A program made the position numbers and the translations under genes. Below are positions 724 to 61,983 of a DNA stretch of 64,000 bases, in pieces. How positions within the stretch are numbered: position 1 is the stretch's first letter; every line of letters starts with the position of its first letter. The stretch is from positions 62,001-126,000 of the IMG/VR virus record IMGVR_UViG_3300028840_002431; one strand, given 5' to 3'. The notes under the pieces were generated by a model, which was not told the DNA's origin, did not search any database, and worked only from the letters and a program-made list of their open reading frames with translations.

Positions 724-753
724 GTTCTTATTTGTGCCGGTGTAAGATCCAAG

Positions 754-1065
754 ATGAGCCTCCCGGATAAATTCTTCGCTGGGTTCCCGGATGAAACTCA
801 GGCTTCAAGATCCACGGTCCTCGACTACATCTACGACACCTTGGACGATTGGATGTTGGAAGGGAACGGGACCGCCGTTGACGAGGTGCTCGACCGAGTA
901 GATGTGGACTCTTGCGAACTCGTGTACCTGATCGGGTACCTCACGATCACGGGACAATGGAAACATAAGCTGACCAAACGGGACGAGTTCTACAACCGGG
1001 TAAGGAGCAGAGTCTTGCAGGAGGAACCAGAACGAGTCATTCCCCTCCTGCAAGGACTACGCTAA
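754..1065 (+). CDS. hypothetical protein
   Basis: 103-aa ORF preceded by GGTGTA-N9-ATG motif. Confidence 0.7.
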   Translation: MSLPDKFFAGFPDETQASRSTVLDYIYDTLDDWMLEGNGTAVDEVLDRVDVDSCELVYLIGYLTITGQWKHKLTKRDEFYNRVRSRVLQEEPERVIPLLQGLR

Positions 1066-1220
1066 TCCGACAGTTGAGCCTGAATCTCGGCCTTAGCTCG
1101 ACGACGAACCCGCGTTTCGATAGCCTTTTCAGCGGCGTTCGGAGCACGCTTCGGGGCATGACCATGACGGACAACCCAAGACTTGCGCCCACCCGCCTTA
1201 CGATATGATCCGTTCCTCAT
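1062..1220 (-). CDS. small basic hypothetical protein (MRNGSYRK...)
   Basis: Internal ATG of the 1062..1358 ORF, Arg/Lys-rich. Confidence 0.45.
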   Translation of the reverse strand: MRNGSYRKAGGRKSWVVRHGHAPKRAPNAAEKAIETRVRRRAKAEIQAQLSD

Positions 1221-1294
1221 GTTTGGTCTACCGCTGGGGTCCCAAAAACCTAAATAAAACGCCCACGAACCTAAGCTCGTGGGCGTTTGAGGGT

Positions 1295-1834
1295 TTATCC
1301 AGCCGCCAACATGTGCCGGGGCGTGCCTCCCAGATAGAAGGACCACTCCTCCGGACACATCTCGATCGGAATCGCTGGCATGGGAAGCGGTAGAGACTTG
1401 GGCCTGTACGGTTTCCTAAGCAACCTCATCTTGGCTTGCCTGGGAGTACGACCGGCCTTACGGGCATTACAGGCGTAGCACGCCGTGACAATGTTGATCC
1501 AGTTAGTCTTACCGCCCTGGTTCCTCGGGGTCACGTGATCGTAGTTCAACTCACGACGCGGAAGCCGATTCCCACAGTACTGGCAGGTGAAGTTGTCACG
1601 AGTCAGAACGTTGATCCGCGAGAACTTGACACCCTTCTTGTGGGTCGGGATTTTGGACGTAAGTCTAGCTACGGACGGAATCTGGTAGGTCACACTCGGA
1701 GACGACACGGTCTCGTCGTAAGACTCCAAGACCTCGATCTCTCCCATGTAGAGCCGACAGATAGCGTCCTGCCAAGGAACGATTCGGTGTGGTTGCATCC
1801 ACGGGGTCAGTAATAGTGTATGGAACTCAGACAT
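1295..1834 (-). CDS. HNH endonuclease (McrA/HNH_5-like)
   Basis: FSRINVLTRDNFTCQYCG, DHVTP..QGG..NWINIVTACYACN motifs. Confidence 0.9.
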   Translation of the reverse strand: MSEFHTLLLTPWMQPHRIVPWQDAICRLYMGEIEVLESYDETVSSPSVTYQIPSVARLTSKIPTHKKGVKFSRINVLTRDNFTCQYCGNRLPRRELNYDHVTPRNQGGKTNWINIVTACYACNARKAGRTPRQAKMRLLRKPYRPKSLPLPMPAIPIEMCPEEWSFYLGGTPRHMLAAG

Positions 1835-2058
1835 TGTCCTAACGCCTCATCAGCGCCTCCTTGTTAAGGTTATTCTCTGGGCCTCTCACACCCGCTAATC
1901 TTTATCAGACATCTTTACGACGATCTCATCATGGACCAACTGAGCCAGATGGGAGAAGATCTCTACAACGTCGCAGTGCCTGAAAGCGTCTTCTAACTCG
2001 TCCAACTGTGTCATGAACAGTTTTTCTATTTCCTCTTTGGTCATCATTCACCTAATCG

Positions 2059-2148
2059 TGCTCGGGGTAAGAGTCGAACTTACAAGCCTCCCGGCCAGCA
2101 AAGCCCTATAGCGACTTCGCCTGTGTCTACCTATTCCACCACCCGAGC
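2059..2148 (-). tRNA. tRNA-Leu-like RNA with 9-bp anticodon stem (loop GCTATAG)
   Basis: Acceptor GCTCGGG/CCCGAGC, Leu-type D arm, long variable arm, GTTCGAC T loop, extended anticodon stem. Confidence 0.7.
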
Positions 2149-2643
2149 AGGAAATCGACGGCCAACCCACGAGCCAAAAAGGCCCGCCTTACGAGTCTTC
2201 CGAATGGCCGGGGCAATACGCAGCCATGCGTCATAAGGCATTGACCCCCGAATGGTATTACATCTTATGCAAGCTGGGACCACATTATCAACGGTGTGTC
2301 CTTTACTATTATCGATACGATCCAAGCTCATTCTAATCGACGCCTCTCCGCAATAGCTACAACCTTTGGAAATCGACTCTGCGATAAACTCCTTTGTGAG
2401 ATCGTTGGCTCTCCCTTTCTTACGATCGACGGCTCTAGTGTCACTGTAGATCGCTTGTGCTGGATTGTTCTTACGATACTGACTACGTTGAACATTCAAT
2501 TTGTCCTTGTGCCGCTGCCAGTAAACTTTACCATAACAAGCTGTGCAGATTCGCCGTCGGTAAGGGGAATTGCGCCTTAACGGTCTGAACTTCCCGATAG
2601 GCTTAGTTTTGTGACAATGCTTACACTTCCGCTCTTCTGGCAT
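2131..2643 (-). CDS. HNH-type homing endonuclease
   Basis: N-terminal CxxC pairs, CSYCG, LDRIDNSKGHTVDNVVPACIRCN. Confidence 0.85.
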   Translation of the reverse strand: MPEERKCKHCHKTKPIGKFRPLRRNSPYRRRICTACYGKVYWQRHKDKLNVQRSQYRKNNPAQAIYSDTRAVDRKKGRANDLTKEFIAESISKGCSYCGEASIRMSLDRIDNSKGHTVDNVVPACIRCNTIRGSMPYDAWLRIAPAIRKTRKAGLFGSWVGRRFPARVVE

Positions 2644-2699
2644 GGTGTTATAATGCCATGCTCGTCATAGCGAGCAAGAGCTATTACACCTCGAAGCTC

Positions 2700-2972: not shown

Positions 2973-3078
2973 CCCTCCAACAAGGACATTACGTTTTCCT
3001 CAAACCTCGTTTCACGTGAAACTTTGTCTCCGTACCTCCTTATATTACACCGAAAAAATCAACTCAAGAAAAATAATT

Positions 3079-3152: not shown

Positions 3153-3401
3153 TCACACTGCGATCAATACCGCCAACTTCTTAGGAGCACGATAGAATGT
3201 AAGAATATCTCCTCCCGAAACACCCGCCAACGCACCCTCAACCAAAGCCCGAAGACGGTACACCCCGTTGGTCTCCGTCTTTTCTAGGACAGCCGACCAC
3301 TGTCCGTAAGGGTGCCCTTCTTCATCTGTAGGCAACCGAACCGTCCCCTGAACCCGTTCAGGGAGAGGCTCGGCCAACTCTTTCACCACAACGAAAGCCA
3401 C
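3153..3401 (-). CDS. hypothetical protein
   Basis: 82-aa ORF, GGTGTA-N9-GTG motif. Confidence 0.6.
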   Translation of the reverse strand: MAFVVVKELAEPLPERVQGTVRLPTDEEGHPYGQWSAVLEKTETNGVYRLRALVEGALAGVSGGDILTFYRAPKKLAVLIAV

Positions 3402-3417
3402 GCCTTAGATTACACCA

Positions 3418-3493: not shown

Positions 3494-3499
3494 TTGGAT

Positions 3500-3892
3500 T
3501 CAGGACGCGGTAATATCGACCTGCCACTCGTCCTTGGCTTTGTCGTATTGTGCGTGGCCGTACATGTCTATTGCACTGTCCAACCACTTGGAGACTCGCT
3601 CCGCTCCCTCGCGTTCTCCGAATTCAATCAGCTTTACTGTGTTCTCCGGACGATCCTTGAGGTACAGCATCCCCTCGATTCTAACACCGTCAGACCCGTG
3701 ATAATACTTACTCAAGTAAGATCGTCTCAGGTCGATATCAAGGCCGACCGACTTTAGGTAGGGGACTGTGGATTTCAACAAGTTATCAAGATCTCGCCGC
3801 TCGGCCTCGGCGTGTGCGTCAATAATGTCCCTCCACTTGGCGTAGAGGTCCATCTTGGCAGCGGTCTTCTTGCGGCGATCGTAGTTGTACAT
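3500..3892 (-). CDS. hypothetical protein, MYxYDRR N-terminal tag
   Basis: Starts MYNYDRR, coupled to upstream ORF. Confidence 0.75.
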   Translation of the reverse strand: MYNYDRRKKTAAKMDLYAKWRDIIDAHAEAERRDLDNLLKSTVPYLKSVGLDIDLRRSYLSKYYHGSDGVRIEGMLYLKDRPENTVKLIEFGEREGAERVSKWLDSAIDMYGHAQYDKAKDEWQVDITAS

Positions 3893-4185
3893 TACGTGGC
3901 CCGGCGTTTGATAACTTCGAATAGATTGGAAGCATCGACCATCGCGTTAAGCGTCTCACGTCGGAGTTCCGCGAACGTCCGTGAGAGTTGCTCTCCTTCA
4001 CGTACCTCACGCGGCTCCAGGGCTTCCAGCCGTTCCAGGTTGCCGAACAGATCTTCAAAAGTACCGTAAGCCTTGTAAACGTCTACCCGGTCAAGTTCCC
4101 TGAAAGCCTTCGTGAGCGGCTTGGTGAACGTCCAGGAGGGTAAAGGCTCTAGCTGGAGCGCAAGACGGCGGTCGTAGCTGTACAT
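3892..4185 (-). CDS. hypothetical protein, MYxYDRR N-terminal tag
   Basis: Starts MYSYDRR. Confidence 0.75.
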   Translation of the reverse strand: MYSYDRRLALQLEPLPSWTFTKPLTKAFRELDRVDVYKAYGTFEDLFGNLERLEALEPREVREGEQLSRTFAELRRETLNAMVDASNLFEVIKRRAT

Positions 4186-8868: not shown

Positions 8869-8899
8869 GGTTCAACTATTACACCGGTTAGAGTTAGAA

Positions 8900-10783: not shown

Positions 10784-10903
10784 ATTTGAGGGCGGGTTTC
10801 CTCTTGGTGTACTATTACACCGCCTCGCGAAATCAGTTTTGCCGTATTCTGACTGTTACACCGGTAAATCTGATTCCTAAAGATTTATTTTAACTCTCTG
10901 GGT

Positions 10904-12493: not shown

Positions 12494-12548
12494 AACGATT
12501 TTTACACCATGTCGCCTTGTAATCGTTTGTTAGTTTGGGCTTTGTAAC

Positions 12549-14997: not shown

Positions 14998-15071
14998 TGG
15001 CACGGGTGGCTGGAATCGAACCAACGTTAACCGGGTCAAAGCCGGTCGCTCTGCCATTGAGCTACACCCGT
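14998..15071 (-). tRNA. tRNA-Gln(TTG), second copy
   Basis: Cloverleaf, loop CTTTGAC, CCA. Confidence 0.85.
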
Positions 15072-17459: not shown

Positions 17460-17470
17460 TACACCAAACT

Positions 17471-18330: not shown

Positions 18331-18681
18331 TTACTGACCCCCGCAGTAGCCCTGTTTTTGCTCTTTACAGGTTCGGGCCTTGGCGATCAGCCAATCGATA
18401 TGACCCTTTATCCTCCCGATCGTCTCGTCCCACTCTTCGTCCTTCCGCTCGTTTTGTCTTTTCTTACAATCATCGAGCATCCGGCTCCAGTTATTAATGG
18501 CCGATCGGGTCTCTGCATGGGCCTCTTCGATCTCTTTTTCGGCCGCTTGCCGCGCTACCTGGGCCTTGTTGTGGAGGTGGTAAATCGTACCGGTTTCCAG
18601 CATCACAAGGAGGGCCAGCGCCACGATAATTACGTTCTTCCAGTGCATCCACGTAATTACACCGTCGGTAGCTGGCATCAT
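18331..18681 (-). CDS. membrane-anchored coiled-coil protein
   Basis: N-terminal TM helix followed by coiled coil. Confidence 0.6.
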   Translation of the reverse strand: MMPATDGVITWMHWKNVIIVALALLVMLETGTIYHLHNKAQVARQAAEKEIEEAHAETRSAINNWSRMLDDCKKRQNERKDEEWDETIGRIKGHIDWLIAKARTCKEQKQGYCGGQ

Positions 18682-19115: not shown

Positions 19116-19130
19116 GGTGTAGGGAACAGC

Positions 19131-19412: not shown

Positions 19413-19484
19413 AGCCTACACCTGGAATCGAACCAGGATCTCTCCCGTACCAGGGGAGTGCATTGGCCATTGTGCTATGTAGGC
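19413..19484 (-). tRNA. tRNA-Thr(GGT)
   Basis: Cloverleaf, loop CTGGTAC. Confidence 0.92.
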
Positions 19485-19488: not shown

Positions 19489-19740
19489 TCAGGGACGCAG
19501 CCCAAGCAGGGATAGCGCCTCGTCCTCGTTCAACCAACCCCGCTGGCAACAAAAGCGGCCAGTGTCCGCGTCCAGAATAACGTGCTGTGCAGCGTCCACC
19601 ATGGCTACGCCGACCCTCCAAAAACTCCACCGTCCGTAGTTATTGTGAGAGCAATTGAGCTTTTCGTCGCGTACTGCCTGTACCAACTGACAGAACTCTT
19701 CTAGCGTCGGCTCCCAAGCTTCACGTCTTTGACAGGGCAT
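19489..19740 (-). CDS. hypothetical protein
   Basis: GGTGTA-N9-ATG. Confidence 0.6.
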   Translation of the reverse strand: MPCQRREAWEPTLEEFCQLVQAVRDEKLNCSHNNYGRWSFWRVGVAMVDAAQHVILDADTGRFCCQRGWLNEDEALSLLGLRP

Positions 19741-19757
19741 GTTCTAGATTACACCGA

Positions 19758-21274: not shown

Positions 21275-21518
21275 CGAGCTTGGCCGCAATCATGTCGATA
21301 ACGTGATGCATGTGCTTGAAAGTGACAACCTCTTCGTCCGTCAACTCGATCCCAAACTCATCCTCGAATTCCATAGAGGCGTCTACCATGTGGGAGGAAT
21401 CGACCCCAAGCTCCTTTTTTAAATGTTGTTCGGGCGTCGCTGTTGGCATGGCTTCCGGCTCGTCCGAGTAAGGAGTAAGAATCTCGACCACCTTCTGTAA
21501 AATTTCATCCTTGCTCAT
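21264..21518 (-). CDS. acyl carrier protein
   Basis: ELGVDS, MEFEDEFGIEL, ATGA overlap with KS. Confidence 0.92.
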   Translation of the reverse strand: MSKDEILQKVVEILTPYSDEPEAMPTATPEQHLKKELGVDSSHMVDASMEFEDEFGIELTDEEVVTFKHMHHVIDMIAAKLDGR

Positions 21519-22774
21519 CACTTCTCCCATTTGCGTAACACAATCACGCTGTTCACATCACCGAAGCCGAAGTTTGCTTTGAGTGCAATGTAGAGAGGCT
21601 TCTCCTCCGTTTGGTGGGGGACACGTTGATCCTCAATTTCGGGGATAGGATCTTCACAGTTTATCGAAGGGTGTATGAAATCGCCTCTCAACATGAGACA
21701 ACAAGCGGCGACCTCGATTCCTCCCGCTGCCTGAAGCGTGTGACCCAAGAGAGACTTCGTTGAATGTATGTAAGGGAGGTCGGAGTCCCCGTAAACCTCT
21801 CGCCAACACCGTACTTCCAGGGCGTCTGCCATCGTGCCAGTCAGATGGCCGTTTATGAAGCTGACATCGAGAGGTCTGATTTTCGCGTTGACGAGAGCCT
21901 TTCGTATACAACGCTGGACGGCGTTCAGGTTTGGGGCCGTCATGCTGCCGCCCTCCCGTTGCGCCCCGCAGTTCGTGTGGTGTCCTAACACTTCGGCGTA
22001 GATTCGAGCACCTCTACGTTCCGCGCTTTCGAGTCTTTCGAGCACCACAACACCAGCCCCGCCGCTGGGCACGAGGCCGGTTGCCGACTTGCTCATAGGG
22101 CGGCTCGCTTTATGAGGCTCGTCCTTGTAGCCTTTCGCTGTCACACGTACAGCGTCCAGGGCCGCCCAGGCGTAGGGTCCGCTGCCTTCGGCCCCGCCGC
22201 ACACCATCCTGTCGGCGTAGCCGTGTTGGATATGCCTCACACCATCCAGGATGGCCGCCAGCCCGGTAGCGCTCGTGGAACTGGCAGCGATTACCTTGTT
22301 CCCCAAACCTAGAAACTCAGCGGTACGGGCCACAATGCCTTCTGACAAGGTCCGGTGAACATGCTTTGCACCCAGCCTACGCACGTTGCCTGAGACAACG
22401 GCCGGGGACAAATCTTCCGCCAAAGCGCGATGTCCGGCATGGCTCCCTGAGCCGATTACGGCTCCTGAGTCCCAGTCAGGAGGCCCCTCTCCCAAAGGCG
22501 GGACCTCAAGCCCGGCGTCTTCCCATGCCTTGACCGCAGCGATACAACCATAACGGTTGACATCGTCCATGTAGGCCAACCGGTTTTTTGGGAAGTAGAC
22601 TTCCGCCAACGTGTCCGTGGCCTCCGGGATACCCGCCACTTGGCACCGGAAGTTTTCCAAATCTTCGTGATAGGCGATTCCGGACCGACCCTCCCGCAGA
22701 TTCTTTTCGAACTCGCCTAAAGTGTTACCAAGGGCGGTAACAACACCCAGCCCGGTGATCACGACCCTTTCCAT
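21518..22774 (-). CDS. FabF-like ketosynthase with active-site Cys replaced by Ser
   Basis: RVVITGLG, SSTSATG (normally xxACxxG), INGHLTGT, KSLLGH, NFGFG. Confidence 0.9.
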   Translation of the reverse strand: MERVVITGLGVVTALGNTLGEFEKNLREGRSGIAYHEDLENFRCQVAGIPEATDTLAEVYFPKNRLAYMDDVNRYGCIAAVKAWEDAGLEVPPLGEGPPDWDSGAVIGSGSHAGHRALAEDLSPAVVSGNVRRLGAKHVHRTLSEGIVARTAEFLGLGNKVIAASSTSATGLAAILDGVRHIQHGYADRMVCGGAEGSGPYAWAALDAVRVTAKGYKDEPHKASRPMSKSATGLVPSGGAGVVVLERLESAERRGARIYAEVLGHHTNCGAQREGGSMTAPNLNAVQRCIRKALVNAKIRPLDVSFINGHLTGTMADALEVRCWREVYGDSDLPYIHSTKSLLGHTLQAAGGIEVAACCLMLRGDFIHPSINCEDPIPEIEDQRVPHQTEEKPLYIALKANFGFGDVNSVIVLRKWEK

Positions 22775-22783: not shown

Positions 22784-23368
22784 CTACACCGAATTATATG
22801 GTTCTTTACCTGACCACTGAGCCAATGTGATTTTGGACCGCCAAACGCCACCAATATGGGCGGCGATACTTCGCGGCGGCTGGTCCAGTGTGGCTCTTTC
22901 GTAAGTGACCATCAGCGACTCACCGGCCCACACAGGCGCGAGAGTATGCAGGTTTCTGAGCCACTGGCACGTTCGTACCAACAAGATGGATTGTGTTCTC
23001 AAGGCACCATGGTCGTCTGAGGGCAACGTCTTATAGTTGTCCATGGCGTAAGCTTCTTGTTCGTCGATCACCTTACGAGGCGTTGCCGCTCTCAGAGTAT
23101 GATGCCTGATCATTGCTTCGGATGCTGGCGTAGGAAAGAGGTCTCTAACAGAGTCCAAGAACATGGCTTTGGCTCCGTCCGGGTTACACAGGGAGAACAC
23201 GTGGAGCCAGTATTGAGGAAACCGGCGATTCAGGTTGTACCACTCCGCCATGGTATCGACGCTGGGCTTCTCGACGAGCGTAACCCCATGCTCGCACCAG
23301 TAAGCGTCCGGCCCCTCCGCCCGTAGCGTTTTGAGCCTGTCAAGAAGCTCAGTGACCTGTGGTTCCAC
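22784..23368 (-). CDS. hypothetical protein
   Basis: 194-aa ORF contiguous with neighbours. Confidence 0.6.
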   Translation of the reverse strand: MEPQVTELLDRLKTLRAEGPDAYWCEHGVTLVEKPSVDTMAEWYNLNRRFPQYWLHVFSLCNPDGAKAMFLDSVRDLFPTPASEAMIRHHTLRAATPRKVIDEQEAYAMDNYKTLPSDDHGALRTQSILLVRTCQWLRNLHTLAPVWAGESLMVTYERATLDQPPRSIAAHIGGVWRSKITLAQWSGKEPYNSV

Positions 23369-24325: not shown

Positions 24326-24358
24326 ATAAACTTATCGTCTCGGTGTATCAAAGCCGGT

Positions 24359-24542: not shown

Positions 24543-25619
24543 ATGTCAGATCAACCGACCGTCATCGCCCTGAAAGAGCTTCTCAAGAAACACGAAGGCT
24601 GGAAGGCCCTGTTAGAAGACTCCATCTCAGAGGCCAAGAAAGAGGCCGTGAGGGGTGGGATTCGGGACGCCGACAAGTTCCCAGAAGGCTTGGAAGGCAA
24701 ACACGGTTATTATCACTACCTGAACGAGATGGTCCAGTGGTGCCCCAGAGAAGACTACGACAAGGAGTGCTTCTACATGCTGGCCAAGTTCTACTGGCTG
24801 TTAGACCAGCCGTCTGGCCGGAAGCTCCAAGAGTCGGACGAGTTCAATACCTGGATGCGTAACTTTGCCGACGACTGGGGAAGCTACCTGAACACAACCG
24901 ACTCGGCCAAGTACATCCAGACCTTTATTGACGACCCGGCCTTCAATGCATGGCAGTACATGAAGAACCCGTCGGGCTGGCTCACCTTCAACCAGTTCTT
25001 CGGCCGGGAAATCAGCCAGGGCCTACGTCCCGTGGCCGGTATGAAGAACGACGACATTATCACATCCCCGGCCGACTCCGTCTTCAAGGAGAAGTTCCAC
25101 ATCACCGACGATGACGAGATCATCATAAAGCTCACCCACCGGTACAAGATCATCGACCTGTTGGAGGACAGTCCCTTCAAGGAGGACTTCCGGGGTGGCC
25201 TCTTCATGCATTCGTTCCTGGGTCCGAACGACTACCACCGGTTCCGTGCTCCCGTGGCCGGGACCGTCCTTGAGTGCCGGGCCATCCAACAGAACGTCTA
25301 TCTGGATGTGCAAATCCGGGACGGACATTTCACCGCTCCGGACGGGGGTGGGTACGAGTTCACCCAGACCCGTGGGCTGATCATCTTCGACTCGCCCGTT
25401 GGCCTAGTGGCCGTTCTGCCGATCGGCATGGCTCAGGTCTCGTCCGTGAACATGACCGCCGTGGAAGGGGCCTATCTCCAGAAGGGTGAGGAGTTCGGCT
25501 ACTTCTTGTTTGGCGGCTCCGACATTATCATGCTCTTCCAGGCCGACAGCGGGGTCGAGATCACCTGTGCGCCGGGCATCCACTACAACTGTGGGATGTG
25601 CGTGGGAGAGGTGCTCTAG
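24543..25619 (+). CDS. psd: phosphatidylserine decarboxylase family proenzyme
   Basis: TFNQFFGR, SPAD, FLGPNDYHRFRAP, KGEEFGYFLFGGSD self-cleavage motif. Confidence 0.92.
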   Translation: MSDQPTVIALKELLKKHEGWKALLEDSISEAKKEAVRGGIRDADKFPEGLEGKHGYYHYLNEMVQWCPREDYDKECFYMLAKFYWLLDQPSGRKLQESDEFNTWMRNFADDWGSYLNTTDSAKYIQTFIDDPAFNAWQYMKNPSGWLTFNQFFGREISQGLRPVAGMKNDDIITSPADSVFKEKFHITDDDEIIIKLTHRYKIIDLLEDSPFKEDFRGGLFMHSFLGPNDYHRFRAPVAGTVLECRAIQQNVYLDVQIRDGHFTAPDGGGYEFTQTRGLIIFDSPVGLVAVLPIGMAQVSSVNMTAVEGAYLQKGEEFGYFLFGGSDIIMLFQADSGVEITCAPGIHYNCGMCVGEVL

Positions 25620-25909
25620 CGTTTCCGCCAGCCGCCGTTCGCTCTAGACCGCCAATACTGAATCCAGTTAGTGCTACAGGTCTTGCACCGGTATAGCGAA
25701 GCATCTCGTATAGGTCGTCTGTCCCGCTCCAGGAGTCCCTTACAGTCAGGGCACTCGTACCCCCCGTCTGTCTTGGTGGGCTGTTCTTCGGACCCGTACA
25801 AGCCAGCGTGGAGACGCCGACCCGGAGGGTGTTCGAGAGCCTCGAAAAGCCGGTTTGACGCTTTCGCTACAGCGTCAGGATCGCTGAGTAATTTTGGTTT
25901 GTCGGACAT
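25616..25909 (-). CDS. zinc-ribbon hypothetical protein
   Basis: CPDC..CKTC, start MSDKPK (the longer ORF overlaps tmRNA). Confidence 0.6.
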   Translation of the reverse strand: MSDKPKLLSDPDAVAKASNRLFEALEHPPGRRLHAGLYGSEEQPTKTDGGYECPDCKGLLERDRRPIRDASLYRCKTCSTNWIQYWRSRANGGWRKR

Positions 25910-26025
25910 GGGTATAATTGATTGGCCTTGAAACGCACAATCTGGCCTGATCGGGACCAGCACGGGTGCCCTGTGCATCTTCACCCTACCCGGCACCGAA
26001 TAGGGTACGTGTTCCAGGGCCAATC

Positions 26026-26405
26026 GGTGGAGTCGGCGGGAATCGAACCCGCGTCCGAAAGTGCTACTAATTACCACCTCTACGTGTGTAGCTCCATTTC
26101 GTGTCTTTGACAGGAACACCACCGGAGCGGGCAAAACCTGGGGGCGGCCTCACGGCTGCCACTTCCACCACTGGTCTAAACAACCTTGATTGAGGACGAC
26201 CAGAGACTGCGCCTCAACTGCACCGGCTAATCGTCGCCCCATCCAAAGACGCCGGATTCTCTGGCGGGACGCCCTAGGCCGCGATGGCCAGGGGTGCTGC
26301 GTTATCGTTCGCAGTTATGTTTGAGCGGCTTGATAACCCGGCCAGCCGATCAACCGGGACACGCAGTAGTAAATTCCACACCTCCGTCGAAACCTTTACG
26401 ACCCC
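26026..26405 (-). ncRNA. ssrA: tmRNA, one-piece, tag ANDNAAPLAIAA (26274..26312)
   Basis: 5' GGGGTCGTAAAGGTTTCGAC, 3' GGACGCGGGTTCGATTCCCGCCGACTCCACC, G3-U70, resume context ATAACT GCG. Confidence 0.96.
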
Positions 26406-26436
26406 ATATGGGACAACCTATATTACACCTCCCACA

Positions 26437-27514: not shown

Positions 27515-27639
27515 CCCCTCAATATTACACCGGAAATCGTCAAAACGCTAGTGCGAAAATTCGCCGTTTTGACACTCAAAACCGGCGCTATTGCGCCACC
27601 CATGTGTAATGAATTCAAGCCGATAGGGCTTGTAAATGG

Positions 27640-30971: not shown

Positions 30972-31015
30972 TGGCGGTAAGCGAAGGAATCGAACCTTCA
31001 TTGACCATCCTTACC
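30972..31015 (-). ncRNA. tRNA minihelix-like element (acceptor and T arm only)
   Basis: GGTAAG..GAAGG TTCGATT CCTTC G CTTACC G CCA. Confidence 0.55.
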
Positions 31016-31357: not shown

Positions 31358-31375
31358 GGCCCGATCCTACACCGA

Positions 31376-36656: not shown

Positions 36657-38142
36657 CTTGTTCCAAGTCGAACATCAATTCAAAAGCCTCTCGCTGAGAG
36701 GCTTCGTCGGCTTTGGTTTCCAGTTCCGGCTTCAAGGCCAACAAGCGTTTCCTCGCCAGCGCATGAGATTCTGGGTCCTTCTCGATACCTATGAAGTTAC
36801 ACCTAGAAGCGATGGCCGCCGCACACGTTGTCCCGGTTCCGCAGTAAGGGTCCAACACAACACCATCTACAGGGGTCACGAGTTTGACAAGCCACTCCAT
36901 GAGCTTCAACGGCTTCATGGTCGGGTGTTTGTTGTCTTCGTCGCCGGGCAACCATCCCCCACGCTCGCGTTTATTCACCTTAGCCGCGTACAGGAACGGC
37001 TCCTCAGGCTGGAACTGGCCGAAGTAATGAGGAGAGTCGGATTTCTGACGCTCCAACGCCTTGGCAGGGCACCCCTCCGCACACCTGTAGATAGGAAGCT
37101 CCTCCATGCCTTCGACGTCGCCGCGATGCTCAGAACTGTACGGATGCCCCGCTCCATCTCCAAACGGCTTCATGCCATCGTCAAAGCGGTTGATAACCGG
37201 AGCCTGTACTTTCTTATACCCTACGATCTTACAGCCGTCCGCATGTGTGACAACAAGGTTGGATGGCCAGCGCCCCTGATCCGTAAACGTAGCCCCAGTG
37301 CCGCGCCTGTAACCGGACCCGCCTTGTCCAACTCCCCACCCCTTTCCGTTTCTTACAGTACGAACTCCAGCCGTCGCTTGTCTTCGTCCGCTTGTTATTC
37401 TAGTGGCATCTATGTTGTATGCTCCGGTGCCGTGCGCCAATACATTGGAAGCCACCGTTGATTCTTCCAAAGGTTTCCGAAAAACGAGTATAGGCTCCCA
37501 CGATGGCTTGAGTGCCGTACCCCAACCCTCCCACGCCCATGCTTCTTTCGTCGCAGGGACTGTGATTGGAGCCTTGGACCAATCCATACGGTCACGCTCG
37601 TCGTGTCGCCCTTCTATCTCCCTCCAATTCTCGCTGATGGCGGCCGACGTACGCTTCTTCCCGTCGTATCTACCCCTAGGATCGTAGGTGCCCACCACCT
37701 GTCGTTTGGCCCCGGCCTCCTCATCGATGGCTTTTGATATATTACGGGACTTGGGGAAGCCTTGTCCGTAGACCCATTGCAGAACCGTACAGGCGAATTG
37801 CGAGGCCACTGTGTCCCGGTTCTCGAACCCAGCGGCTCTGATCCCCAAGGAGATGAGGTCAGAAGTCCGGGTCCCGCCAAAACTCAACAGGTGGCCGCCC
37901 GGTTTCAACACCCGGAAACACTCTTTCCACACGGAAACAGACGGGATGTGCCAGTCCCGGCCCATGAAATCCCCACCCGTATCGAGGTCGGAGTCTCCTG
38001 AGAGATAGGCTATAATCTCGTCGATTCCCGGTTCCCGGTCGCCAAGACCGTAAGGAGGATCGGTGACAATAGAGTCCACGGAAGCGTCCGGCAGCGTCCG
38101 GAGAACCTCTAGACACGTCCCCAGTAGAATCGAGTTCAACAC
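36649..38142 (-). CDS. N4/N6 DNA methyltransferase (beta class)
   Basis: VTDPPYG, HPTMKP, VLDPYCGTGTT. Confidence 0.93.
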   Translation of the reverse strand: MLNSILLGTCLEVLRTLPDASVDSIVTDPPYGLGDREPGIDEIIAYLSGDSDLDTGGDFMGRDWHIPSVSVWKECFRVLKPGGHLLSFGGTRTSDLISLGIRAAGFENRDTVASQFACTVLQWVYGQGFPKSRNISKAIDEEAGAKRQVVGTYDPRGRYDGKKRTSAAISENWREIEGRHDERDRMDWSKAPITVPATKEAWAWEGWGTALKPSWEPILVFRKPLEESTVASNVLAHGTGAYNIDATRITSGRRQATAGVRTVRNGKGWGVGQGGSGYRRGTGATFTDQGRWPSNLVVTHADGCKIVGYKKVQAPVINRFDDGMKPFGDGAGHPYSSEHRGDVEGMEELPIYRCAEGCPAKALERQKSDSPHYFGQFQPEEPFLYAAKVNKRERGGWLPGDEDNKHPTMKPLKLMEWLVKLVTPVDGVVLDPYCGTGTTCAAAIASRCNFIGIEKDPESHALARKRLLALKPELETKADEASQREAFELMFDLEQDD

Positions 38143-38997: not shown

Positions 38998-39957
38998 CTA
39001 ACTAAATTCGCGGGCTAACGGTCGCACCGTATCGATTACCGACTTACAGACCTTGGGCGGAAGCTCGGTATTTCTAAGGGCTTGCATAAGGGAAGCCCCG
39101 TTCTCCAACGACGTGAAGACCTTTGATTCGGTCTCCTTCACAGGCTTACAACCTTCCAGGCCGACCATGTGCTCGTGCAAGGTGTTAGAAAGCATCTGAC
39201 GAGCCTCGTCAAGGGCGATCATGGTGTCAGCGTTTGCCGACTTATCGGGAAGGGTTGACTCCCAAGCCGGTGCCTCCTCGTTACGCTTGTAAGCCGGGGG
39301 CGTGTACGGACGTTCCTTGTGCCGTCGCTCCTGGGTCCGACAGAAATTCGCGTAATGGTTCAAAACAGCCATAACCAGATAATTCTGGAACTGGGCCTTG
39401 GTCGGCTTCACCTCCGGGAACTTGAGATAACCCTCAGGACGACTTTCTCCTACAACAACTCCGTCCTGGACATCACGGCCCATCTTCCGAAAGGTTTTCT
39501 CTTCCAGAGTCAGTCGAATCACATCCTCGAAAGCGACCAGCGCGGTCTTAGCGTTGTAGCCAAACAGGCCCTGGACCTGGAATTCCATCAAGTTGATCGG
39601 AGTGGGCATCCAGTGGCCCCTCTTCCGGGGACCCGGCTTACGGGTCCCGTCCTTTCGCTTCCGTGGTTGGCCTTTGTGGTAGGACCACATAGCCGATTCC
39701 CACTGTTGCCAGGAAACCCCCAGGAAATCACAGGCTTGCGTAGCCGATAAAACCTTCGGGGTCTGGCGTTGTATTTTTGCCTCGAATCGGAGAAGGAGCC
39801 GGGCTTCTATCAGCTTCATCCAGATGTACGAATGCAAGTCCTCGAAGTTTCTCTCGATCTTGTTTGCCTTGAGAAGCACCGAATAGATAAGGCGTCCGTA
39901 CTGCCGTTCCAACTCATCGTAATTCTTGGGTATAACTGACACGTGTGACGATGGCAT
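38998..39957 (-). CDS. putative divergent sigma-factor-like protein with insertion
   Basis: YDELERQYGRLIY..FEDLHSYIWMKL and FQNYLVMAVLNHYANFCR resemble ECF regions 2.1-2.4. Confidence 0.55.
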   Translation of the reverse strand: MPSSHVSVIPKNYDELERQYGRLIYSVLLKANKIERNFEDLHSYIWMKLIEARLLLRFEAKIQRQTPKVLSATQACDFLGVSWQQWESAMWSYHKGQPRKRKDGTRKPGPRKRGHWMPTPINLMEFQVQGLFGYNAKTALVAFEDVIRLTLEEKTFRKMGRDVQDGVVVGESRPEGYLKFPEVKPTKAQFQNYLVMAVLNHYANFCRTQERRHKERPYTPPAYKRNEEAPAWESTLPDKSANADTMIALDEARQMLSNTLHEHMVGLEGCKPVKETESKVFTSLENGASLMQALRNTELPPKVCKSVIDTVRPLAREFS

Positions 39958-40562
39958 CAGTGGGGTCCCCGGTATATGGCTCGCTAGAAACGAGGTAAAG
40001 GTTTAAACAATTGAAATGTAGCGGTGAATCAGTAGGACTACCTCAGGCGTTGGTTAGTCGTCAATAAATAAAATCGGTTGGTACACGATTTTTTGTGGTT
40101 AGATAGGAAAAATAAATTGATACGTTTTAATCTGTCTATGAATTCTTGTGTGACTTTGGTTGGTTAAAGGTTAAACAGCTTTTTGGGTTTAGGTTTTAGT
40201 TTTCGGTTTATTGGAGTCTCTGGTTTCAGTCCGTCATCGACGATGTCGATGGGAAGATCTTTTAGCTCAACTCGATCTTCTCGTTACCTACTTCGCTGGA
40301 TACTGGACTGGAAAGAGTTGATTTCCCTAAGTATCCCTCCGCCGACCACCCTTCCGTCTGCAACCCACTTCTACCGGTGACGAAAAGACGATCGGAGCAT
40401 CCAACCTCTGATAGGTTGGCCAGAGCAGTTGGCCTTGTTCACCCTCCTAGGCTGCCTTAAGAGAGCGCCCTGCAAAGCAGGTATGGGGGCCTGAGGACGC
40501 CAAACCCATGCGGGTCAAACGGTTATACACCACGTTCCTGTCCGGTGGTGTAAAAAGGAAAC

Positions 40563-41177: not shown

Positions 41178-41648
41178 TTAGAGTTTGTTCAATCTCTCGT
41201 TCAGACTTGAGATCAATTCGAGGTATTTGCGGACGACGTTTTCGGCCGTCTTTTCGGTTCGCCATCTTCTGAACGGACTCGGCTCGGGCACCTTGGGCAA
41301 TTTCAGAGGCGGGACGGGCGGCACAGGCTTGGGCGGCACAGGCGGTTTCTCTGGTACCGGGGGGCGGATGGGCGCTGGCGGCGGGTCCACTGGAATCCTG
41401 GCCCTCTCTGGCTTCTGAGGGTACCGTGGCGGCTTCGGCTTCCCCCTCCATTGAGGTTCGCCCACCTCGTTCGGGCGGAGCTTCTGGAAGCGTTCTGGCT
41501 GTTCCTTGAGCGTTTCCGGCAGGACGTAGACGGTCCGACCCGTCTCCCGGTTCTTCACGGGGATCTCTTCGGCCCAGCGAGCCAGGACACGGTGAAGAAG
41601 ATCGCTCACCCTTACGTGAATCCATAAGAAGATGCTACACCGGGCCAC
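41178..41648 (-). CDS. proline-rich hypothetical protein
   Basis: PPVP repeats, RVLARWA and VVRKYL tags, start probably later. Confidence 0.6.
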   Translation of the reverse strand: MARCSIFLWIHVRVSDLLHRVLARWAEEIPVKNRETGRTVYVLPETLKEQPERFQKLRPNEVGEPQWRGKPKPPRYPQKPERARIPVDPPPAPIRPPVPEKPPVPPKPVPPVPPLKLPKVPEPSPFRRWRTEKTAENVVRKYLELISSLNERLNKL

Positions 41649-43296: not shown

Positions 43297-43368
43297 CCCT
43301 GACCTCCTCCTACTGTTACACCGGACCCTGGATAATTCAAAAGTTATTTTTAAAAAAGCCTAACTGTC

Positions 43369-51095: not shown

Positions 51096-51202
51096 TTCAC
51101 TCCAAGCGGACCGATAGATAAAAAACGGGTTATGCGAGCCTTTCCACAAGTTGCCGTTACATAAGGAAAAATTTACGGGCCTCTCATGGTGTAAGAAGGA
51201 AA

Positions 51203-54127: not shown

Positions 54128-54752
54128 GGACGACTCTACACCGCTGTTAGAAACAATGGAATACGGACAGCTTACTGTTGAAACCTTGGACGACGTGACC
54201 CCTCGATTGAGAGAGTTCACCGTCGATCTTATCAAGCGGCTCCGCGCCTGTGAAATCGATGTGGAGACAACGACAGTTTACCTATTAAACTCCACGGACC
54301 ATCCAATCGAAGTACCGTCCTCAGGGGACGGCGTTCCTATTGAGATGAATTTTGACGCGACGCTGCCGGTCTGGGCACCAGAACCCAGAGCGAGACTTCA
54401 AGCCAGTTTTAATCACGGGAGACGTTACTACTTCGTAGAACGGGGCAAGAAGGCCAGTAACGCCAAGTTCGCCATGGCCAGGGTGTTAAAACGCTTTCTC
54501 ACAGAGATCAAGATAGAGGAACGTAAGCGGCGACTGGCAGTAGAAAAAGAAGAGAAAGCCGTCCAAGCAGCGCAGCGTTTCAAGGTCATGGCGGAAGAGC
54601 TTGGAATCCCCATGGCCGGGGACCCACCCCAGATTAAGAAGGGGAACGTCCAGGTATCGTGCCAGCCTCAAAAATCGACCGAAGTGCGCCTCTCCATAAG
54701 TATTCCCCACGCCCAAGCCGTTGAAATCATTACTAAATACATGAAAGAATAG
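54126..54752 (+). CDS. hypothetical protein (start uncertain)
   Basis: Long ORF divergent from the RHH gene. Confidence 0.6.
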   Translation: MDDSTPLLETMEYGQLTVETLDDVTPRLREFTVDLIKRLRACEIDVETTTVYLLNSTDHPIEVPSSGDGVPIEMNFDATLPVWAPEPRARLQASFNHGRRYYFVERGKKASNAKFAMARVLKRFLTEIKIEERKRRLAVEKEEKAVQAAQRFKVMAEELGIPMAGDPPQIKKGNVQVSCQPQKSTEVRLSISIPHAQAVEIITKYMKE

Positions 54753-60217: not shown

Positions 60218-60392
60218 GTACGATTGTAGATGCTCTCCAGCTTCTTGAGTTGCTTGGCGGTGAGGTTCTGCCCTCTTTGAAGACGCTCCTCGATATTAAT
60301 CACGAAGTCCTCTTCCCACTCATCCAATTCGAAGTCCTCGTCTAACCGGAGGCAATCGTTGATGGCTCCTATCATATCCAGCGGCGTAGCCA

Positions 60393-60614
60393 TCAGTTGC
60401 TCTCCCGGTCTGGGAGGTCGAACAACTTGGAGAGGTCCTTCGTTATGTCCGCTTCCGTGCGCCCGTAGGTGATGACAGCCTGACCGTCCATCCTGAACGG
60501 CTGTAGGTCGATAACGATCTGCTTGCCCTGCCTCAGGAGTTCGAGGTTGGTTTCGGACAGACCCAGGATAACGACCGGCTTGCCTTCGTTGTTAGTGACG
60601 CCCAGTTTGATCAT
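60393..60614 (-). CDS. small hypothetical protein
   Basis: GGAGG RBS before MIKLG. Confidence 0.6.
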   Translation of the reverse strand: MIKLGVTNNEGKPVVILGLSETNLELLRQGKQIVIDLQPFRMDGQAVITYGRTEADITKDLSKLFDLPDRESN

Positions 60615-60993
60615 GCGAGCCAACCCTCCTGAAACAATCCAGTGGGCCGAGCACAAGACTTTGCCCACACACCGGACACGGGTCCCCGACCACAAGCCCG
60701 TCGTGCTTGCCGTGCTCCGGGCAGAAGACCTGGAACACAGCTTCGACTCTACCCCAACCGGGGACGCCGTTGTGTTCCTGGGTACCAGCCAACCCGTTGA
60801 GGACGCCTAACAAGCCGACGCCGAACTTACCCCCATCGGCTGCTACCTGGATTGTCGGGTGCTCAGCCAAGGCTTTGTTGCACGGGACTCTTGCCTCCGT
60901 CAGAGCGTAGACGGCTGCCGGGTCTGACTCCAACGCGCTGTTCATCACCTCGACGATGCGATCCGCTATCAGTTCATCAAGTTCTTTTTCCAT
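60592..60993 (-). CDS. hypothetical protein
   Basis: GGTGTA-N9-ATG. Confidence 0.7.
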   Translation of the reverse strand: MEKELDELIADRIVEVMNSALESDPAAVYALTEARVPCNKALAEHPTIQVAADGGKFGVGLLGVLNGLAGTQEHNGVPGWGRVEAVFQVFCPEHGKHDGLVVGDPCPVCGQSLVLGPLDCFRRVGSHDQTGRH

Positions 60994-61012
60994 GGCCTAC
61001 CTTACACCACCG

Positions 61013-61690
61013 TCACCGCTTCTCGAACCGATACCCGAAATACGCAATATCTTTAGCGTATCTCTTTTCCACAATCTCTCTCCGCTTCTCATTGTAGTAT
61101 TTACTGTAGTGTTCGTGGTCGGTCTTTAGTGTATGAGGAAGCGCTGTCTGAGGCAGTCCCAGATCCCGGCACACGCAATCAAAGTCTTCTTGGAGCCGCT
61201 CAAATTGAATAAACCGAAAGGGTGCCTCCACGCCCGGCTGTGTCACGAAGTCCAACACAGGGTCCAGCAATAACCCTTTCCCGGTACCTTGCTTCGGGAA
61301 CTGAGCTTCCGGTCTTCCATCTCTAGTTTCTATAATCCGGAACCAGTGGTCCAAGGACACACGCTCGTACACCTGACTATAATAAAAGTATCCGGAAACG
61401 ACACGATCCCACGGGTTACGAGCGGTAGCAAAAAAATAGAACCGTTTTAACGCTTTCGGGTCAAAAAGACGGGCAAAGTAATCCAGCCTCGCGTGTTTAA
61501 TATCGTCGCCAGAGATACGGACACACACATTATCGTTGTCGAAGTGTGGGTACGACGTTATAACCCCATCGGCGTAGGGAGTCAGAGCAACCTCTATGGA
61601 GTTCCCACCGGTTTTGGCCGGGTGTATAAATATAAAGTTGTGCTTGTAGGAAATCACCCCGCGTGCCTGAATATCTGGAACAGTCCACAC
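61013..61690 (-). CDS. sulfotransferase family 2 protein
   Basis: FIFIHPAKTGGNSI, RNPWDRVVSGYFY, FERLQEDF, DIAYFGY. Confidence 0.9.
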   Translation of the reverse strand: MWTVPDIQARGVISYKHNFIFIHPAKTGGNSIEVALTPYADGVITSYPHFDNDNVCVRISGDDIKHARLDYFARLFDPKALKRFYFFATARNPWDRVVSGYFYYSQVYERVSLDHWFRIIETRDGRPEAQFPKQGTGKGLLLDPVLDFVTQPGVEAPFRFIQFERLQEDFDCVCRDLGLPQTALPHTLKTDHEHYSKYYNEKRREIVEKRYAKDIAYFGYRFEKR

Positions 61691-61947
61691 CCTACTTGCG
61701 TGTAATACACCTTAAGCTTCTCGCCCTTCCAGTCATAATACTTGTCGAACGGTTCGTAGCGGACTGTGTCAGCATATAACTCTCTTCCGATAACCTTGCC
61801 TTCTTCGTCTCTTTTGTCTTTCCATCTCGTGCGAACAAAGACCAGTTTGCCCGTAGTGTTGGTATAACCCTTCTTTCCAAAAGACCTGAACACATAGGTC
61901 TTTCCAGCCCGGAGATCCTTGTACTGTTTGACTGGTACCTTCTTCAC
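61654..61947 (-). CDS. hypothetical protein
   Basis: 97-aa ORF. Confidence 0.55.
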   Translation of the reverse strand: MKKVPVKQYKDLRAGKTYVFRSFGKKGYTNTTGKLVFVRTRWKDKRDEEGKVIGRELYADTVRYEPFDKYYDWKGEKLKVYYTQVGCGLFQIFRHAG

Positions 61948-61983
61948 ACGGCGTAATACACCTTTTTTGGCGATCCTAGAACA

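What the first reader, a model, noticed from the sequence alone, without database searches (positions are those of the whole stretch)
735..61965. Recurring GGTGTA-N9-11-start motif: likely phage promoter making leaderless mRNAs
Seen: (C)GGTGTA lies 9-11 nt before the start codon of ORFs starting at 754, 3401, 8868, 12493, 19131, 19740, 22774, 24359, 27514, 31357, 40563, 51203, 54127 and 60993, mostly without a Shine-Dalgarno. It also occurs upstream of tmRNA. Inference: GGTG+TAnnn(T) is a -10-like element with transcription starting at or near the ATG. Genes carrying the N-terminal tags instead have T-rich upstream tracts such as TTTTG, suggesting a second promoter class.
Basis: partly seen in the sequence, partly recalled or inferred. 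Interest (0 to 1): 0.6.

Follow-up and report, generated by a model that had tools for sequence, protein, structure and literature searches.

The report
Huge-phage promoter abutting start codons
A seven-letter DNA signal (C/T-GGTGTA-A/G) sits 9-10 bases before the start codons of about 50 genes of this 416-kb uncultured marine phage. It is conserved in all its relatives and is most likely a compact promoter whose messenger RNAs begin at, or within a few bases of, the start codon.

Summary
GGTGTA occurs 52 times in the window against 21 expected. In the whole 416.5-kb phage genome, 56 of 265 copies lie exactly 9 or 10 nt before the start of an ORF of at least 50 aa, against about 4 per other distance (Poisson p ~6e-27).

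The core does not vary. It points at a co-oriented gene in 85 of 90 intergenic cases and marks heads of transcription units. It replaces the Shine-Dalgarno site (16% against 44% SD-like). It is enriched in seven relatives of 44-59% GC, but not in unrelated phages or in 41 Acidobacteriota genomes.

Three results argue for a promoter and against a ribosome signal:
- A second class has the SD starting 8-10 nt after the core.
- The motif lies upstream of tmRNAs and of a conserved structured RNA.
- One relative has a TTGAAT box placed exactly 17 bp before the TA.

The geometry leaves at most about 5 nt of leader. No RNA data exist, so the transcription start is inferred. Which sigma factor reads the motif is unresolved. 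TAnnnT is not conserved across the clade, and the proposed "TTTTG" second promoter class is not supported.

The parts
739..744 (+). Motif, 9 nt before ATG 754 (ORF 754-1065, 103 aa). Forms a divergent pair with site 702-707(-).
702..707 (-). Motif pointing the other way from 739-744. It has a TTGACT box 16 nt before the hexamer that follows it. The downstream gene starts further on, so this site is leadered or unassigned.
3411..3416 (-). Motif directly after tRNA-Ala, 9 nt before GTG 3401 (82 aa).
8880..8885 (-). Motif in a 31-nt gap, 11 nt before ATG 8868 (313 aa).
10806..10821 (.). Back-to-back pair of motifs, one on each strand, 4 nt apart. The minus copy lies 32 nt before GTG 10783 (VWA protein, 627 aa) with an SD-like stretch between. 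The plus copy faces ORF 10904.
12503..12508 (-). Motif 9 nt before ATG 12493 (196 aa).
17460..17465 (-). Motif 9 nt before ATG 17450 (101 aa). The motif is kept before the G001 ortholog.
18658..18663 (-). Motif 9 nt before ATG 18648 (105 aa).
19116..19121 (+). Motif 9 nt before ATG 19131 (93 aa).
19750..19755 (-). Motif directly after tRNA-Leu, 9 nt before ATG 19740 (83 aa).
22785..22790 (-). Motif 10 nt before ATG 22774 (beta-ketoacyl synthase, 418 aa).
24342..24347 (+). Motif 11 nt before ATG 24359 (60 aa).
26424..26429 (-). Motif 18 nt before the 5' end of the tmRNA gene (26025-26405). The target is non-coding.
   Evidence: the G004 tmRNA has the motif 16 nt upstream
27526..27531 (-). Motif 11 nt before ATG 27514 (88 aa). 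The motif is kept before the G001 ortholog.
31368..31373 (-). Motif directly after tRNA-Asn, 10 nt before ATG 31357 (119 aa). The motif is kept in G001.
40526..40531 (-). Motif at the head of a conserved, structured non-coding stretch of about 400 nt that runs into the sigma-like ORF. The motif is kept at this place in 7 of 9 relatives.
40130..40500 (-). Conserved structured RNA candidate, either a 5' leader or a separate RNA. No Rfam family matches.
   Evidence: 41 predicted pairs, 24 with compensatory changes
38998..39957 (-). Sigma-like ORF (319 aa). It has a region-2-like domain carrying an insertion. The C-terminal domain is unassigned.
40547..40552 (+). Motif 10 nt before ATG 40563 (104 aa), divergent from 40526-40531. 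The motif is kept in four relatives.
41636..41641 (-). Motif 10 nt before ATG 41625 (269 aa).
43317..43322 (-). Leadered class: motif, 5 nt, a strong SD, then ATG 43296 (469 aa, phrog_6077). It has a TTGAAT box 12 nt upstream. The relative L066 has the same layout.
51188..51193 (+). Motif 9 nt before ATG 51203 (dCTP deaminase, 191 aa).
54137..54142 (-). Motif 9 nt before ATG 54127 (97 aa).
61003..61008 (-). Motif 9 nt before ATG 60993 (133 aa).
61957..61962 (-). Motif 9 nt before GTG 61947 (97 aa). Not kept in G001.
62878..62883 (-). Motif 10 nt before ATG 62867 (75 aa).

Best explanation
C/T-GGTGTA-A/G is the -10-region element of a compact promoter of the bacterial sigma-70 type, and this clade of ~400-kb phages uses it about 90-100 times per genome. 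The phage has no RNA polymerase of its own, so the host core enzyme must read it.

Inferred geometry. The TA of the motif corresponds to positions -12/-11, and GGTG acts like an extended -10 contact. This makes a -35 box dispensable: a -35 box is frequent in G002 and rare in this genome. Melting and initiation then fall 8-10 nt after the motif.

Two gene layouts use this fixed start point:
- In about 50 genes the ATG or GTG sits there. The mRNA then has no leader, or at most a few nucleotides, has no Shine-Dalgarno site, and must be translated by the leaderless route.
- In others the Shine-Dalgarno sequence sits there and the start codon follows 6-9 nt later.

The same element also drives non-coding RNAs: the tmRNA and a structured RNA ahead of the sigma-like gene. 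It serves the non-structural part of the genome (the tRNA region, nucleotide and lipid metabolism genes, methylases, small ORFs) and not the virion gene blocks.

Shown: the motif, its spacing, its orientation, its context and its conservation. Inferred: that it is a promoter, and where transcription starts.

Unresolved: which sigma reads it. My split is about 0.4-0.45 for the host primary sigma, alone or with a phage co-factor, about 0.3-0.35 for the phage's own sigma-like protein, and the remainder for other factors.
For: Position.
- 56 of 265 copies lie 9-10 nt before ORF starts, p ~6e-27.
- GGTGTA is the most enriched upstream hexamer, 41 against 3.3 expected. SD is the second class.
- One-mismatch variants are not enriched.

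Direction and context.
- 85 of 90 intergenic sites point at a co-oriented gene, against a 52% baseline, p ~9e-19.
- Motif genes have a divergent upstream neighbour in 37% of cases against 12%.
- Their upstream gaps are 15 nt or less in 9% of cases against 49%.
- They are SD-like in 16% of cases against 44%.

Evidence against a ribosome signal.
- In leadered sites the SD starts 8-9 nt after the core, in 5 of 5 short-leader cases in G001. G000 and G002 show the same.
- The motif lies 18 and 16 nt before the tmRNAs of G000 and G004.
- It heads a conserved structured non-coding RNA.
- Back-to-back divergent pairs leave only 43-60 nt between start codons.

Promoter architecture.
- In G002, 42 of 221 sites have TTGA exactly 13 nt before the core, which is 17 bp before the TA, against a background of about 2. 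An A-tract lies upstream of it.
- About 10% of G000 and G001 sites have the same box.
- No other sigma-70-type promoters are enriched: 11 against 8.4 expected.

Start-point context. Position -1 is a pyrimidine in 67% of motif genes against 49% of others (p = 0.02), and in 80% of the 9-nt class.

Conservation.
- Counts of GGTGTA-N9/10-ATG in G001-G007 are 47, 39, 13, 28, 22, 8 and 10. The reversed-pattern controls give 3, 7, 2, 8, 0, 0 and 0.
- 19 of 33 orthologs in G001 keep the motif against 6 of 229 other genes, p ~3e-15, while the flanking sequence has diverged.

No phage polymerase. No PF00562 or PF00940 match and no NADFDGD-type motif was found in G000 or in the complete relatives.

Known signature. 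The T of the TA lies 11-12 nt before the start codon, as in known leaderless genes (PMC3160421, PMC12340547).
Against: - There is no transcript evidence at all. Only three DNA metagenomes hold the sequence, so neither promoter activity nor the start point has been observed.
- The -7 T that sigma-70-type -10 elements need is not conserved: 57% in this genome, 2 of 22 sites in G005, and A in the G002 cassette.
- TG sits one position closer to the TA than in the canonical extended -10 element.
- With the 9-nt spacing, the A of ATG is only the 6th base after the hexamer. That is the short end of known start-site ranges.
- Intrinsic terminators are not enriched upstream of the sites.
- The host is unknown, so its ability to translate leaderless mRNAs is also unknown.
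- About 10 of the 51 called motif genes may be chance in-gene copies.
Confidence: 0.72

Rival explanations
1. The motif acts on the mRNA as a non-Shine-Dalgarno translation signal, that is, a ribosome-binding or enhancer element at a fixed distance from the start codon. The transcripts would start further upstream.
For: The spacing to the start codon is fixed and the motif genes lack an SD.
Against: - The same motif precedes SD-led genes, with the SD starting 8-10 nt after it.
- It also precedes non-coding RNAs.
- In G002 it is phased 17 bp from a -35-like box.
- Divergent pairs leave no room for upstream promoters.
- By my own inspection from memory of the rRNA sequence, not a tool result, the conserved 16S 3' region has no contiguous complement to the motif.
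Confidence: 0.06
2. The motif is an RNA processing site. A phage or host endoribonuclease would cut a few nucleotides downstream and so create mRNAs that begin at the AUG or at the SD.
For: Several sites directly follow tRNA 3' ends. The product would have the same fixed geometry as a promoter would give.
Against: - The phased -35-like box and the A-tract in G002 are DNA-level promoter features.
- Back-to-back divergent pairs would need promoters inside the neighbouring genes.
- The sites are enriched at strand switches.
Confidence: 0.07
3. GGTGTA is the operator of a phage DNA-binding regulator, either an activator or a repressor. One of the tandem Sigma70_r4 HTH proteins is a candidate. The operator would overlap otherwise ordinary promoters rather than being the -10 element itself.
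For: - The six bases are fully invariant, which is unusual for a -10 element.
- The phage encodes two proteins with tandem region-4-type HTH domains.
- Palindromic back-to-back copies exist.
Against: - Most sites are single and oriented (85 of 90).
- No other promoter-like signal is enriched nearby.
- The motif occupies exactly the -10 position relative to the -35 box in G002.
Confidence: 0.1
4. The pattern is chance or a compositional artefact, for example a codon-driven hexamer or a repeat family.
For: About 115 of the 265 copies lie inside genes and look random.
Against: Shuffles, permutation controls, reversed-pattern controls, unrelated phages and 41 bacterial genomes all lack the peak. 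The flanks are not conserved, so the sites are not a repeat family.
Confidence: 0.01

Closest known systems
'-10 motif adjacent to the ORF' promoters of leaderless genes (TA-led genes of Deinococcus-Thermus and Actinobacteria; PMC3160421, PMC12340547, PMC4007540)
   Same: - Two upstream signal classes are present in one genome: a -10-like one and GGAG-type SD.
- The T of the TA lies 11-12 nt before the start codon.
- A -35 box is optional.
- The inference from geometry to leaderless mRNA is the same.
   Different: - Here the conserved unit is GGTGTA-A/G with four invariant bases upstream of the TA. The -7 T is not conserved.
- The element belongs to a phage clade and was not found enriched in the bacterial genomes tested.
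Middle/late promoters of Thermus phage phiYS40 (Sevostyanova et al. 2007, cited in PMC12340547; content recalled from memory, the paper is not held)
   Same: A phage without its own polymerase has many promoters with a single -10-like element and no -35 box, and most of their transcripts are leaderless.
   Different: - phiYS40 encodes no sigma, and its element resembles the host -10 consensus.
- Here the motif is non-canonical and marks non-structural rather than late genes.
phiEco32 gp36 sigma-dependent promoters (AATGTA centred at -11.5; tAATGTAtA; PMC12276001, PMC4331800)
   Same: - A short invariant element containing TGTA lies in the -10 region, and -35 information is weak or absent.
- The phage encodes a very divergent sigma and uses the host core enzyme.
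- If the registers were equal, transcription would start 1-2 nt before the ATG.
   Different: - Homology of the window's sigma-like ORF to gp36 is not shown (Foldseek E = 0.67).
- gp36 promoters serve middle and late genes, including structural ones, and are not described as leaderless in the texts read.
Extended -10 (TGn-TATAAT) promoters
   Same: A TG-containing extension upstream of the TA makes the -35 box dispensable.
   Different: - The TG directly abuts the TA, with no spacer base.
- Two further G bases are invariant.
- The downstream hexamer is degenerate.

Membership tests
Leaderless-gene promoters (-10 element abutting the ORF) | A TA-initiated -10-like signal about 10-12 nt before the start codon, positionally enriched | tested here: met
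   The T of the TA lies 11 nt (38 sites) or 12 nt (18 sites) before the start. The same peak is seen in G001 and G002.
Leaderless-gene promoters (-10 element abutting the ORF) | TANNNT hexamer (conserved -11 A and -7 T) | tested here: not met
   T at the sixth position: 20 of 35 sites in G000, 2 of 22 in G005, and A in the dominant G002 cassette.
Leaderless-gene promoters (-10 element abutting the ORF) | No Shine-Dalgarno site between the promoter and the start codon | tested here: met
   16% SD-like against 44% in other genes. Only 9-10 nt are available.
Leaderless-gene promoters (-10 element abutting the ORF) | Transcription start coincides with the start codon | not testable with these tools
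   No RNA run holds the sequence. The only indirect support is the pyrimidine at -1 and A at +1 and the SD onset 8-10 nt after the core in leadered sites.
Sigma-70-type bipartite promoter | A -35 TTGACA-like box 16-18 bp upstream of the -10 hexamer | tested here: inconclusive
   Met in G002 (42 sites with TTGA exactly 17 bp before the TA). Present in only about 10% of sites in G000 and G001, with no information at -35 overall.
Shine-Dalgarno / ribosome-binding site | Complementarity to the 16S 3' end, 5-10 nt before the start, in coding genes only | tested here: not met
   The motif co-occurs with true SDs placed downstream of it and precedes tmRNA and another non-coding RNA.
Sigma-70 family protein (ORF 38998-39957) | Region 2 (core binding and -10 recognition) | tested here: inconclusive
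   - Pfam Sigma70_r2 scores below its cut-off (E = 0.04). 7 of 17 homologs match weakly, best E = 0.0056.
- One homolog carries a precomputed PF04542 hit.
- 14 of the top 20 VIA-align matches of the AF2 model are sigma region-2 domains, at Z 6-7.7, which is below the level the tool calls secure.
- There is no sequence match to PDB chains.
Sigma-70 family protein (ORF 38998-39957) | Region 4 (-35 recognition HTH) | tested here: not met
   The C-terminal 84 residues were folded alone (pLDDT 78). No sigma region-4 or HTH match appears among the top 50; the hits are generic helical ones at Z <= 7.4. A G-x-S-L...V-R-K-S-V pattern recalls region 4.2, but only by eye.
phiEco32 gp36-type sigma/promoter system | Homology of the sigma to gp36, and recognition of the TGTA element by it | tested here: inconclusive
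   The gp36 complex 9m7y_F is the top Foldseek row, but at E = 0.67. The motifs share only TGTA (PMC12276001).

The most novel reading that the evidence does not exclude
A clade of ~400-kb marine phages carries its own transcription code. A very divergent phage sigma, made of a region-2 domain split by an insertion of ~110 residues, reads the invariant GGTGTA-A/G element on host core polymerase. Its regulon would be ~100 units per genome whose RNAs start directly at the AUG or directly at the SD. The regulon would include the tmRNA and a new structured RNA that sits ahead of the sigma gene and may feed back on it. Together with the phage's 50-odd tRNAs, this would let the phage re-route both transcription and translation initiation.
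Probability: 0.3. Interest if true: 0.65.

Novelty: new variant of a known kind. Interest (0 to 1): 0.5.

Why it matters
- Gene maps. The motif gives a simple, testable rule for start codons and transcription units in a whole clade of uncultured huge phages, where gene callers that rely on SD sites mis-set starts. My own caller moved 14 of 51 such starts.
- Phage translation. It would show that huge phages can use leaderless and "SD-first" mRNAs on a large scale. That bears on how they redirect host translation, a question raised but left open in the huge-phage literature (PMC7162821).
- Practical uses. A 7-bp, -35-independent promoter with a fixed start point would be a compact part for expression design. 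It is also a handle for finding the host and the responsible sigma.

Tried and rejected
- RNA evidence. The one run search found only three DNA metagenomes (marine sediment and seawater) and no RNA. I therefore did not use read laying, because contigs cannot show starts.
- Close cultured relatives. There is no DNA match in the phage collection. Protein matches are only about 30% identical.
- Exact extended consensus across IMG/VR. The scan gave 53 single chance hits and no multi-hit contig. One of these, G009 (6 pattern hits), turned out to be coding-sequence noise with no distance peak and no sigma homolog.
- Terminators upstream of the sites. Not enriched: 3 of 51 against 14 of 477; 18 against 19.5 expected.
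- Stop-codon coupling. TAA or TAG is formed by the motif in 45 of 51 sites, but the upstream frames are mostly under 50 codons, so it is not a re-initiation signal.
- Second promoter class. TTTG gives a weak hump only, and the tagged genes share no motif.
- A shared late-promoter motif in the structural blocks. None was seen by eye, and I did not pursue it.
- Host. One pattern scan with the ketoacyl synthase gave weak Acidobacteriota hits of 30-37% identity. The atlas look-up gave mixed phyla. 41 Acidobacteriota genomes show no enrichment of the motif. The host remains unknown.
- Sigma-like ORF. The profile finds no PDB sequence. The C-terminal domain has no region-4 match.
- Operator notes.

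Full report
**What the sequence is.** The window is bases 62001-126000 of a 416,539-bp IMG/VR virus record. The record is linear, CheckV completeness is 87%, and GC is 55%. It carries 44 tRNA genes and a tmRNA in the window and 54 RNA genes genome-wide. It also has phage packaging and baseplate genes. The same phage occurs in marine sediment and seawater metagenomes and on a second, identical 173-kb contig. No close cultured relative exists.

**Checking the observation.**
- GGTGTA occurs 52 times in the window against 21.3 +/- 4.2 in shuffles.
- Of the 265 genome-wide copies, 38 end 9 nt and 18 end 10 nt before the start codon of an ORF of at least 50 aa. The background is 4.3 per distance with a maximum of 8, giving p = 5.6e-27.
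- No other permutation of the six letters gives such a peak.
- With a home-made gene caller (528 genes), GGTGTA is the most enriched hexamer upstream of starts, 41 against 3.3 expected. The second class is a canonical AGGAGG Shine-Dalgarno site.
- One-mismatch variants are not enriched. The flanks add C/T before the core and A/G after it, followed in this genome by a T-A-T preference.

**Context.**
- The 51 motif genes have a divergent upstream neighbour in 37% of cases, against 12% for other genes.
- They sit within 15 nt of the preceding gene in 9% of cases against 49%.
- They have an SD-like tetramer in 16% of cases against 44%, and start with ATG in 78%.
- Of 90 intergenic C/T-GGTGTA-A/G sites, 85 point at a co-oriented gene, against a baseline of 52% (p ~9e-19).
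- Copies inside genes lack the flank preferences.
- The motif is dense between 46 and 312 kb: tRNA region, dCTP deaminase, ketoacyl synthase, methylases, small ORFs. It is nearly absent from 0-45 kb and 312-416 kb, which hold the portal, terminase, protease and baseplate genes.

**Promoter or ribosome signal?** Several results argue against an mRNA-level signal.
- A second, phase-locked class exists. Here the motif is followed after 8-10 nt by a strong SD and then by the start codon. Examples are window 43317, five of five short-leader cases in G001, and many in G002. The same point 8-10 nt after the core therefore carries either the AUG or the SD, as expected if RNAs begin there.
- The motif precedes non-coding genes. 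It lies 18 nt before the full-length tmRNA here and 16 nt before the tmRNA of relative G004. The tmRNAs of G002 and G003 lack it.
- It also precedes a conserved non-coding stretch of about 400 nt ahead of the sigma-like gene, which has 24 of 41 predicted pairs supported by compensatory changes.
- Divergent pairs leave 43-60 nt between start codons, and some motifs lie back to back 4 nt apart.
- In the 412-kb relative G002 (GC 44%), 42 of 221 copies have TTGA exactly 13 nt before the core, against about 2 at other offsets. This is part of an A-tract-CTTGAAT box and puts a -35-like hexamer 17 bp before the TA of the motif. About a tenth of the sites in this genome and in G001 have the same box.
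- Ordinary -35/-10 promoters and intrinsic terminators are not enriched.

**Conservation.** The sigma-like ORF at 38998-39957 has 56 homologs of 37-72% identity on contigs of up to 453 kb, and local gene order is conserved.
- In seven IMG/VR relatives, with sigma identity 70-38% and GC 44-59%, GGTGTA-N9/10-ATG occurs 47, 39, 13, 28, 22, 8 and 10 times. The reversed pattern occurs 3, 7, 2, 8, 0, 0 and 0 times.
- Whole-genome analysis of G001 and G002 shows the same distance peak.
- Of 33 motif genes with a G001 ortholog, 19 keep the motif at 8-12 nt, against 6 of 229 other genes (p ~3e-15). The spacer and upstream flank have diverged.
- Orthologous examples are the Metallophos gene, the 103-aa gene divergent from the sigma gene, and the N6/N4 methylase.
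- Unrelated viral contigs and 41 Acidobacteriota genomes show no enrichment.

**Where transcription would start.**
- The T of the TA is 11-12 nt before the start codon. This is the signature used to call leaderless genes in bacteria (PMC3160421) and validated experimentally in Deinococcus (PMC12340547).
- If TA is at -12/-11, as the G002 -35 spacing implies, initiation cannot fall more than a few nucleotides from the A of ATG. The leader is then at most about 5 nt and has no room for an SD.
- The base before the start codon is a pyrimidine in 67% of motif genes, and in 80% of the 9-nt class, against 49% elsewhere. With A at +1 this is the usual start-site context.
- This is inference. No RNA data exist.

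- TAnnnT is not the conserved unit. The sixth base is T in 57% of sites here, in 2 of 22 sites in GC-rich G005, and is A in the G002 cassette.
- The TG abuts the TA without the spacer base of a canonical extended -10 element.
- The 18 genes with recurrent N-terminal peptides (MYSYDRR, MDHxRWKT, xPRKAFE) indeed lack GGTGTA. They share no TTTTG motif, and TTTG gives only a weak hump.

**Which polymerase and sigma.**
- No multisubunit or T7-type polymerase is detectable in this genome or in the complete relatives, so host core enzyme is implied.
- The 319-aa ORF is plausibly a sigma. Its Sigma70_r2 matches are sub-threshold, in 7 of 17 family members. Its region 2.1/2.2-like sequence is recognisable by eye. 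Sigma region-2 domains take 14 of the top 20 structural matches at Z 6-7.7, around an insertion of about 110 residues. Its C-terminal domain shows no region-4 match.
- For the host primary sigma: the TTGA-type -35 box at 17 bp, the A-tract, the non-structural gene set, and the conserved motif upstream of the sigma gene itself.
- For a phage factor: the invariance of GGTG, the missing -7 T, conservation across relatives of very different GC, and the resemblance to the TGTA-containing promoters of the phiEco32 sigma gp36 (PMC12276001, PMC4331800).
- I leave this open, at about 0.4-0.45 for the host sigma and 0.3-0.35 for the phage sigma.

**Verdict.** The finding is real, statistically overwhelming and conserved across the clade. 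It is best explained as a compact promoter that yields leaderless or SD-first RNAs (confidence 0.72). The kind is known, from leaderless-gene promoters and from phage-specific -10 elements. The motif, its invariance and its use across a clade of huge phages appear undescribed in the papers searched.

Noticed in passing
window 40130-40500 (-); also L066:9439-9840, L067:9387-9800, L068:9347-9790, L069:9255-9710, L073:9246-9700, L074:9248-9700: A conserved structured non-coding RNA candidate of about 350-400 nt lies between a GGTGTA site and the sigma-like gene. RNAalifold predicts 41 pairs, 24 of them with compensatory changes, including a long-range helix. No Rfam family matches at E <= 1. It could be a regulatory leader of the sigma gene or a separate RNA.
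   Followed up: partly
G002 (L117-L130 and L135-L154), e.g. L119, L122, L126: Relative G002 uses a near-identical cassette of about 45 nt: A-tract, CTTGAAT, 13 nt rich in C and T, GGTGTA, GTAATAGAT, ATG. It stands in front of dozens of unrelated genes. 49 sites carry the -35-like box, clustered at 111-155, 178-184, 222-253 and 275-278 kb.
   Followed up: partly
window 3500-4185, 15665, 27640, 11209, 12549, 13198, 20584, 32367 and elsewhere in the genome: Otherwise different ORFs share recurrent N-terminal peptides: M-Y-S-Y-D-R-R (7 genes), M-D-H-x-R-W-K-T (6 genes) and x-P-R-K-A-F-E (5 genes). None of them has the GGTGTA motif. Their meaning is unknown.
   Followed up: partly
genome 33.2-33.8 kb (L056:1174-1815, -) and 139.8-140.4 kb (L057:1423-1956, +): Two small proteins (213 and 177 aa) each carry two Sigma70_r4-type HTH domains and no region 2. 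They are possible transcription regulators or sigma-appropriation factors.
   Followed up: no
window 21518-22774 (-), 24543-25619 (+): The phage encodes lipid-metabolism genes: a beta-ketoacyl synthase (FabF-like) and a phosphatidylserine decarboxylase. The first is driven by a GGTGTA site.
   Followed up: no
window 25655-26119 (-): ARAGORN's second, permuted 'tmRNA*' call overlaps the real tmRNA and has no Rfam support. It is probably a false call.
   Followed up: yes
window 15063-15068 and 19417-19422 (-): Two GGTGTA copies lie inside tRNA genes: the 5' end of tRNA-Gln and the 3' part of tRNA-Thr. They are not promoter sites. Small ORFs fill the gaps between tRNAs exactly (3153-3401, 19489-19740, 30998-31357), and each has the motif directly after the preceding tRNA.
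   Followed up: partly
window 35937-38142 (-) and relatives L066-L069: A conserved gene block lies next to the sigma-like gene: a 270-aa protein, an N6/N4 DNA methylase and an MT-A70 methylase. The block is syntenic in all relatives examined.
   Followed up: no
window 39958-40010 (-), just upstream of the sigma-like ORF: A short conserved hairpin (CTCGTTT ... AAACGAG in L066; a weaker one in the window) sits directly before the start of the sigma-like gene, which has no SD. It may have a regulatory role.
   Followed up: no
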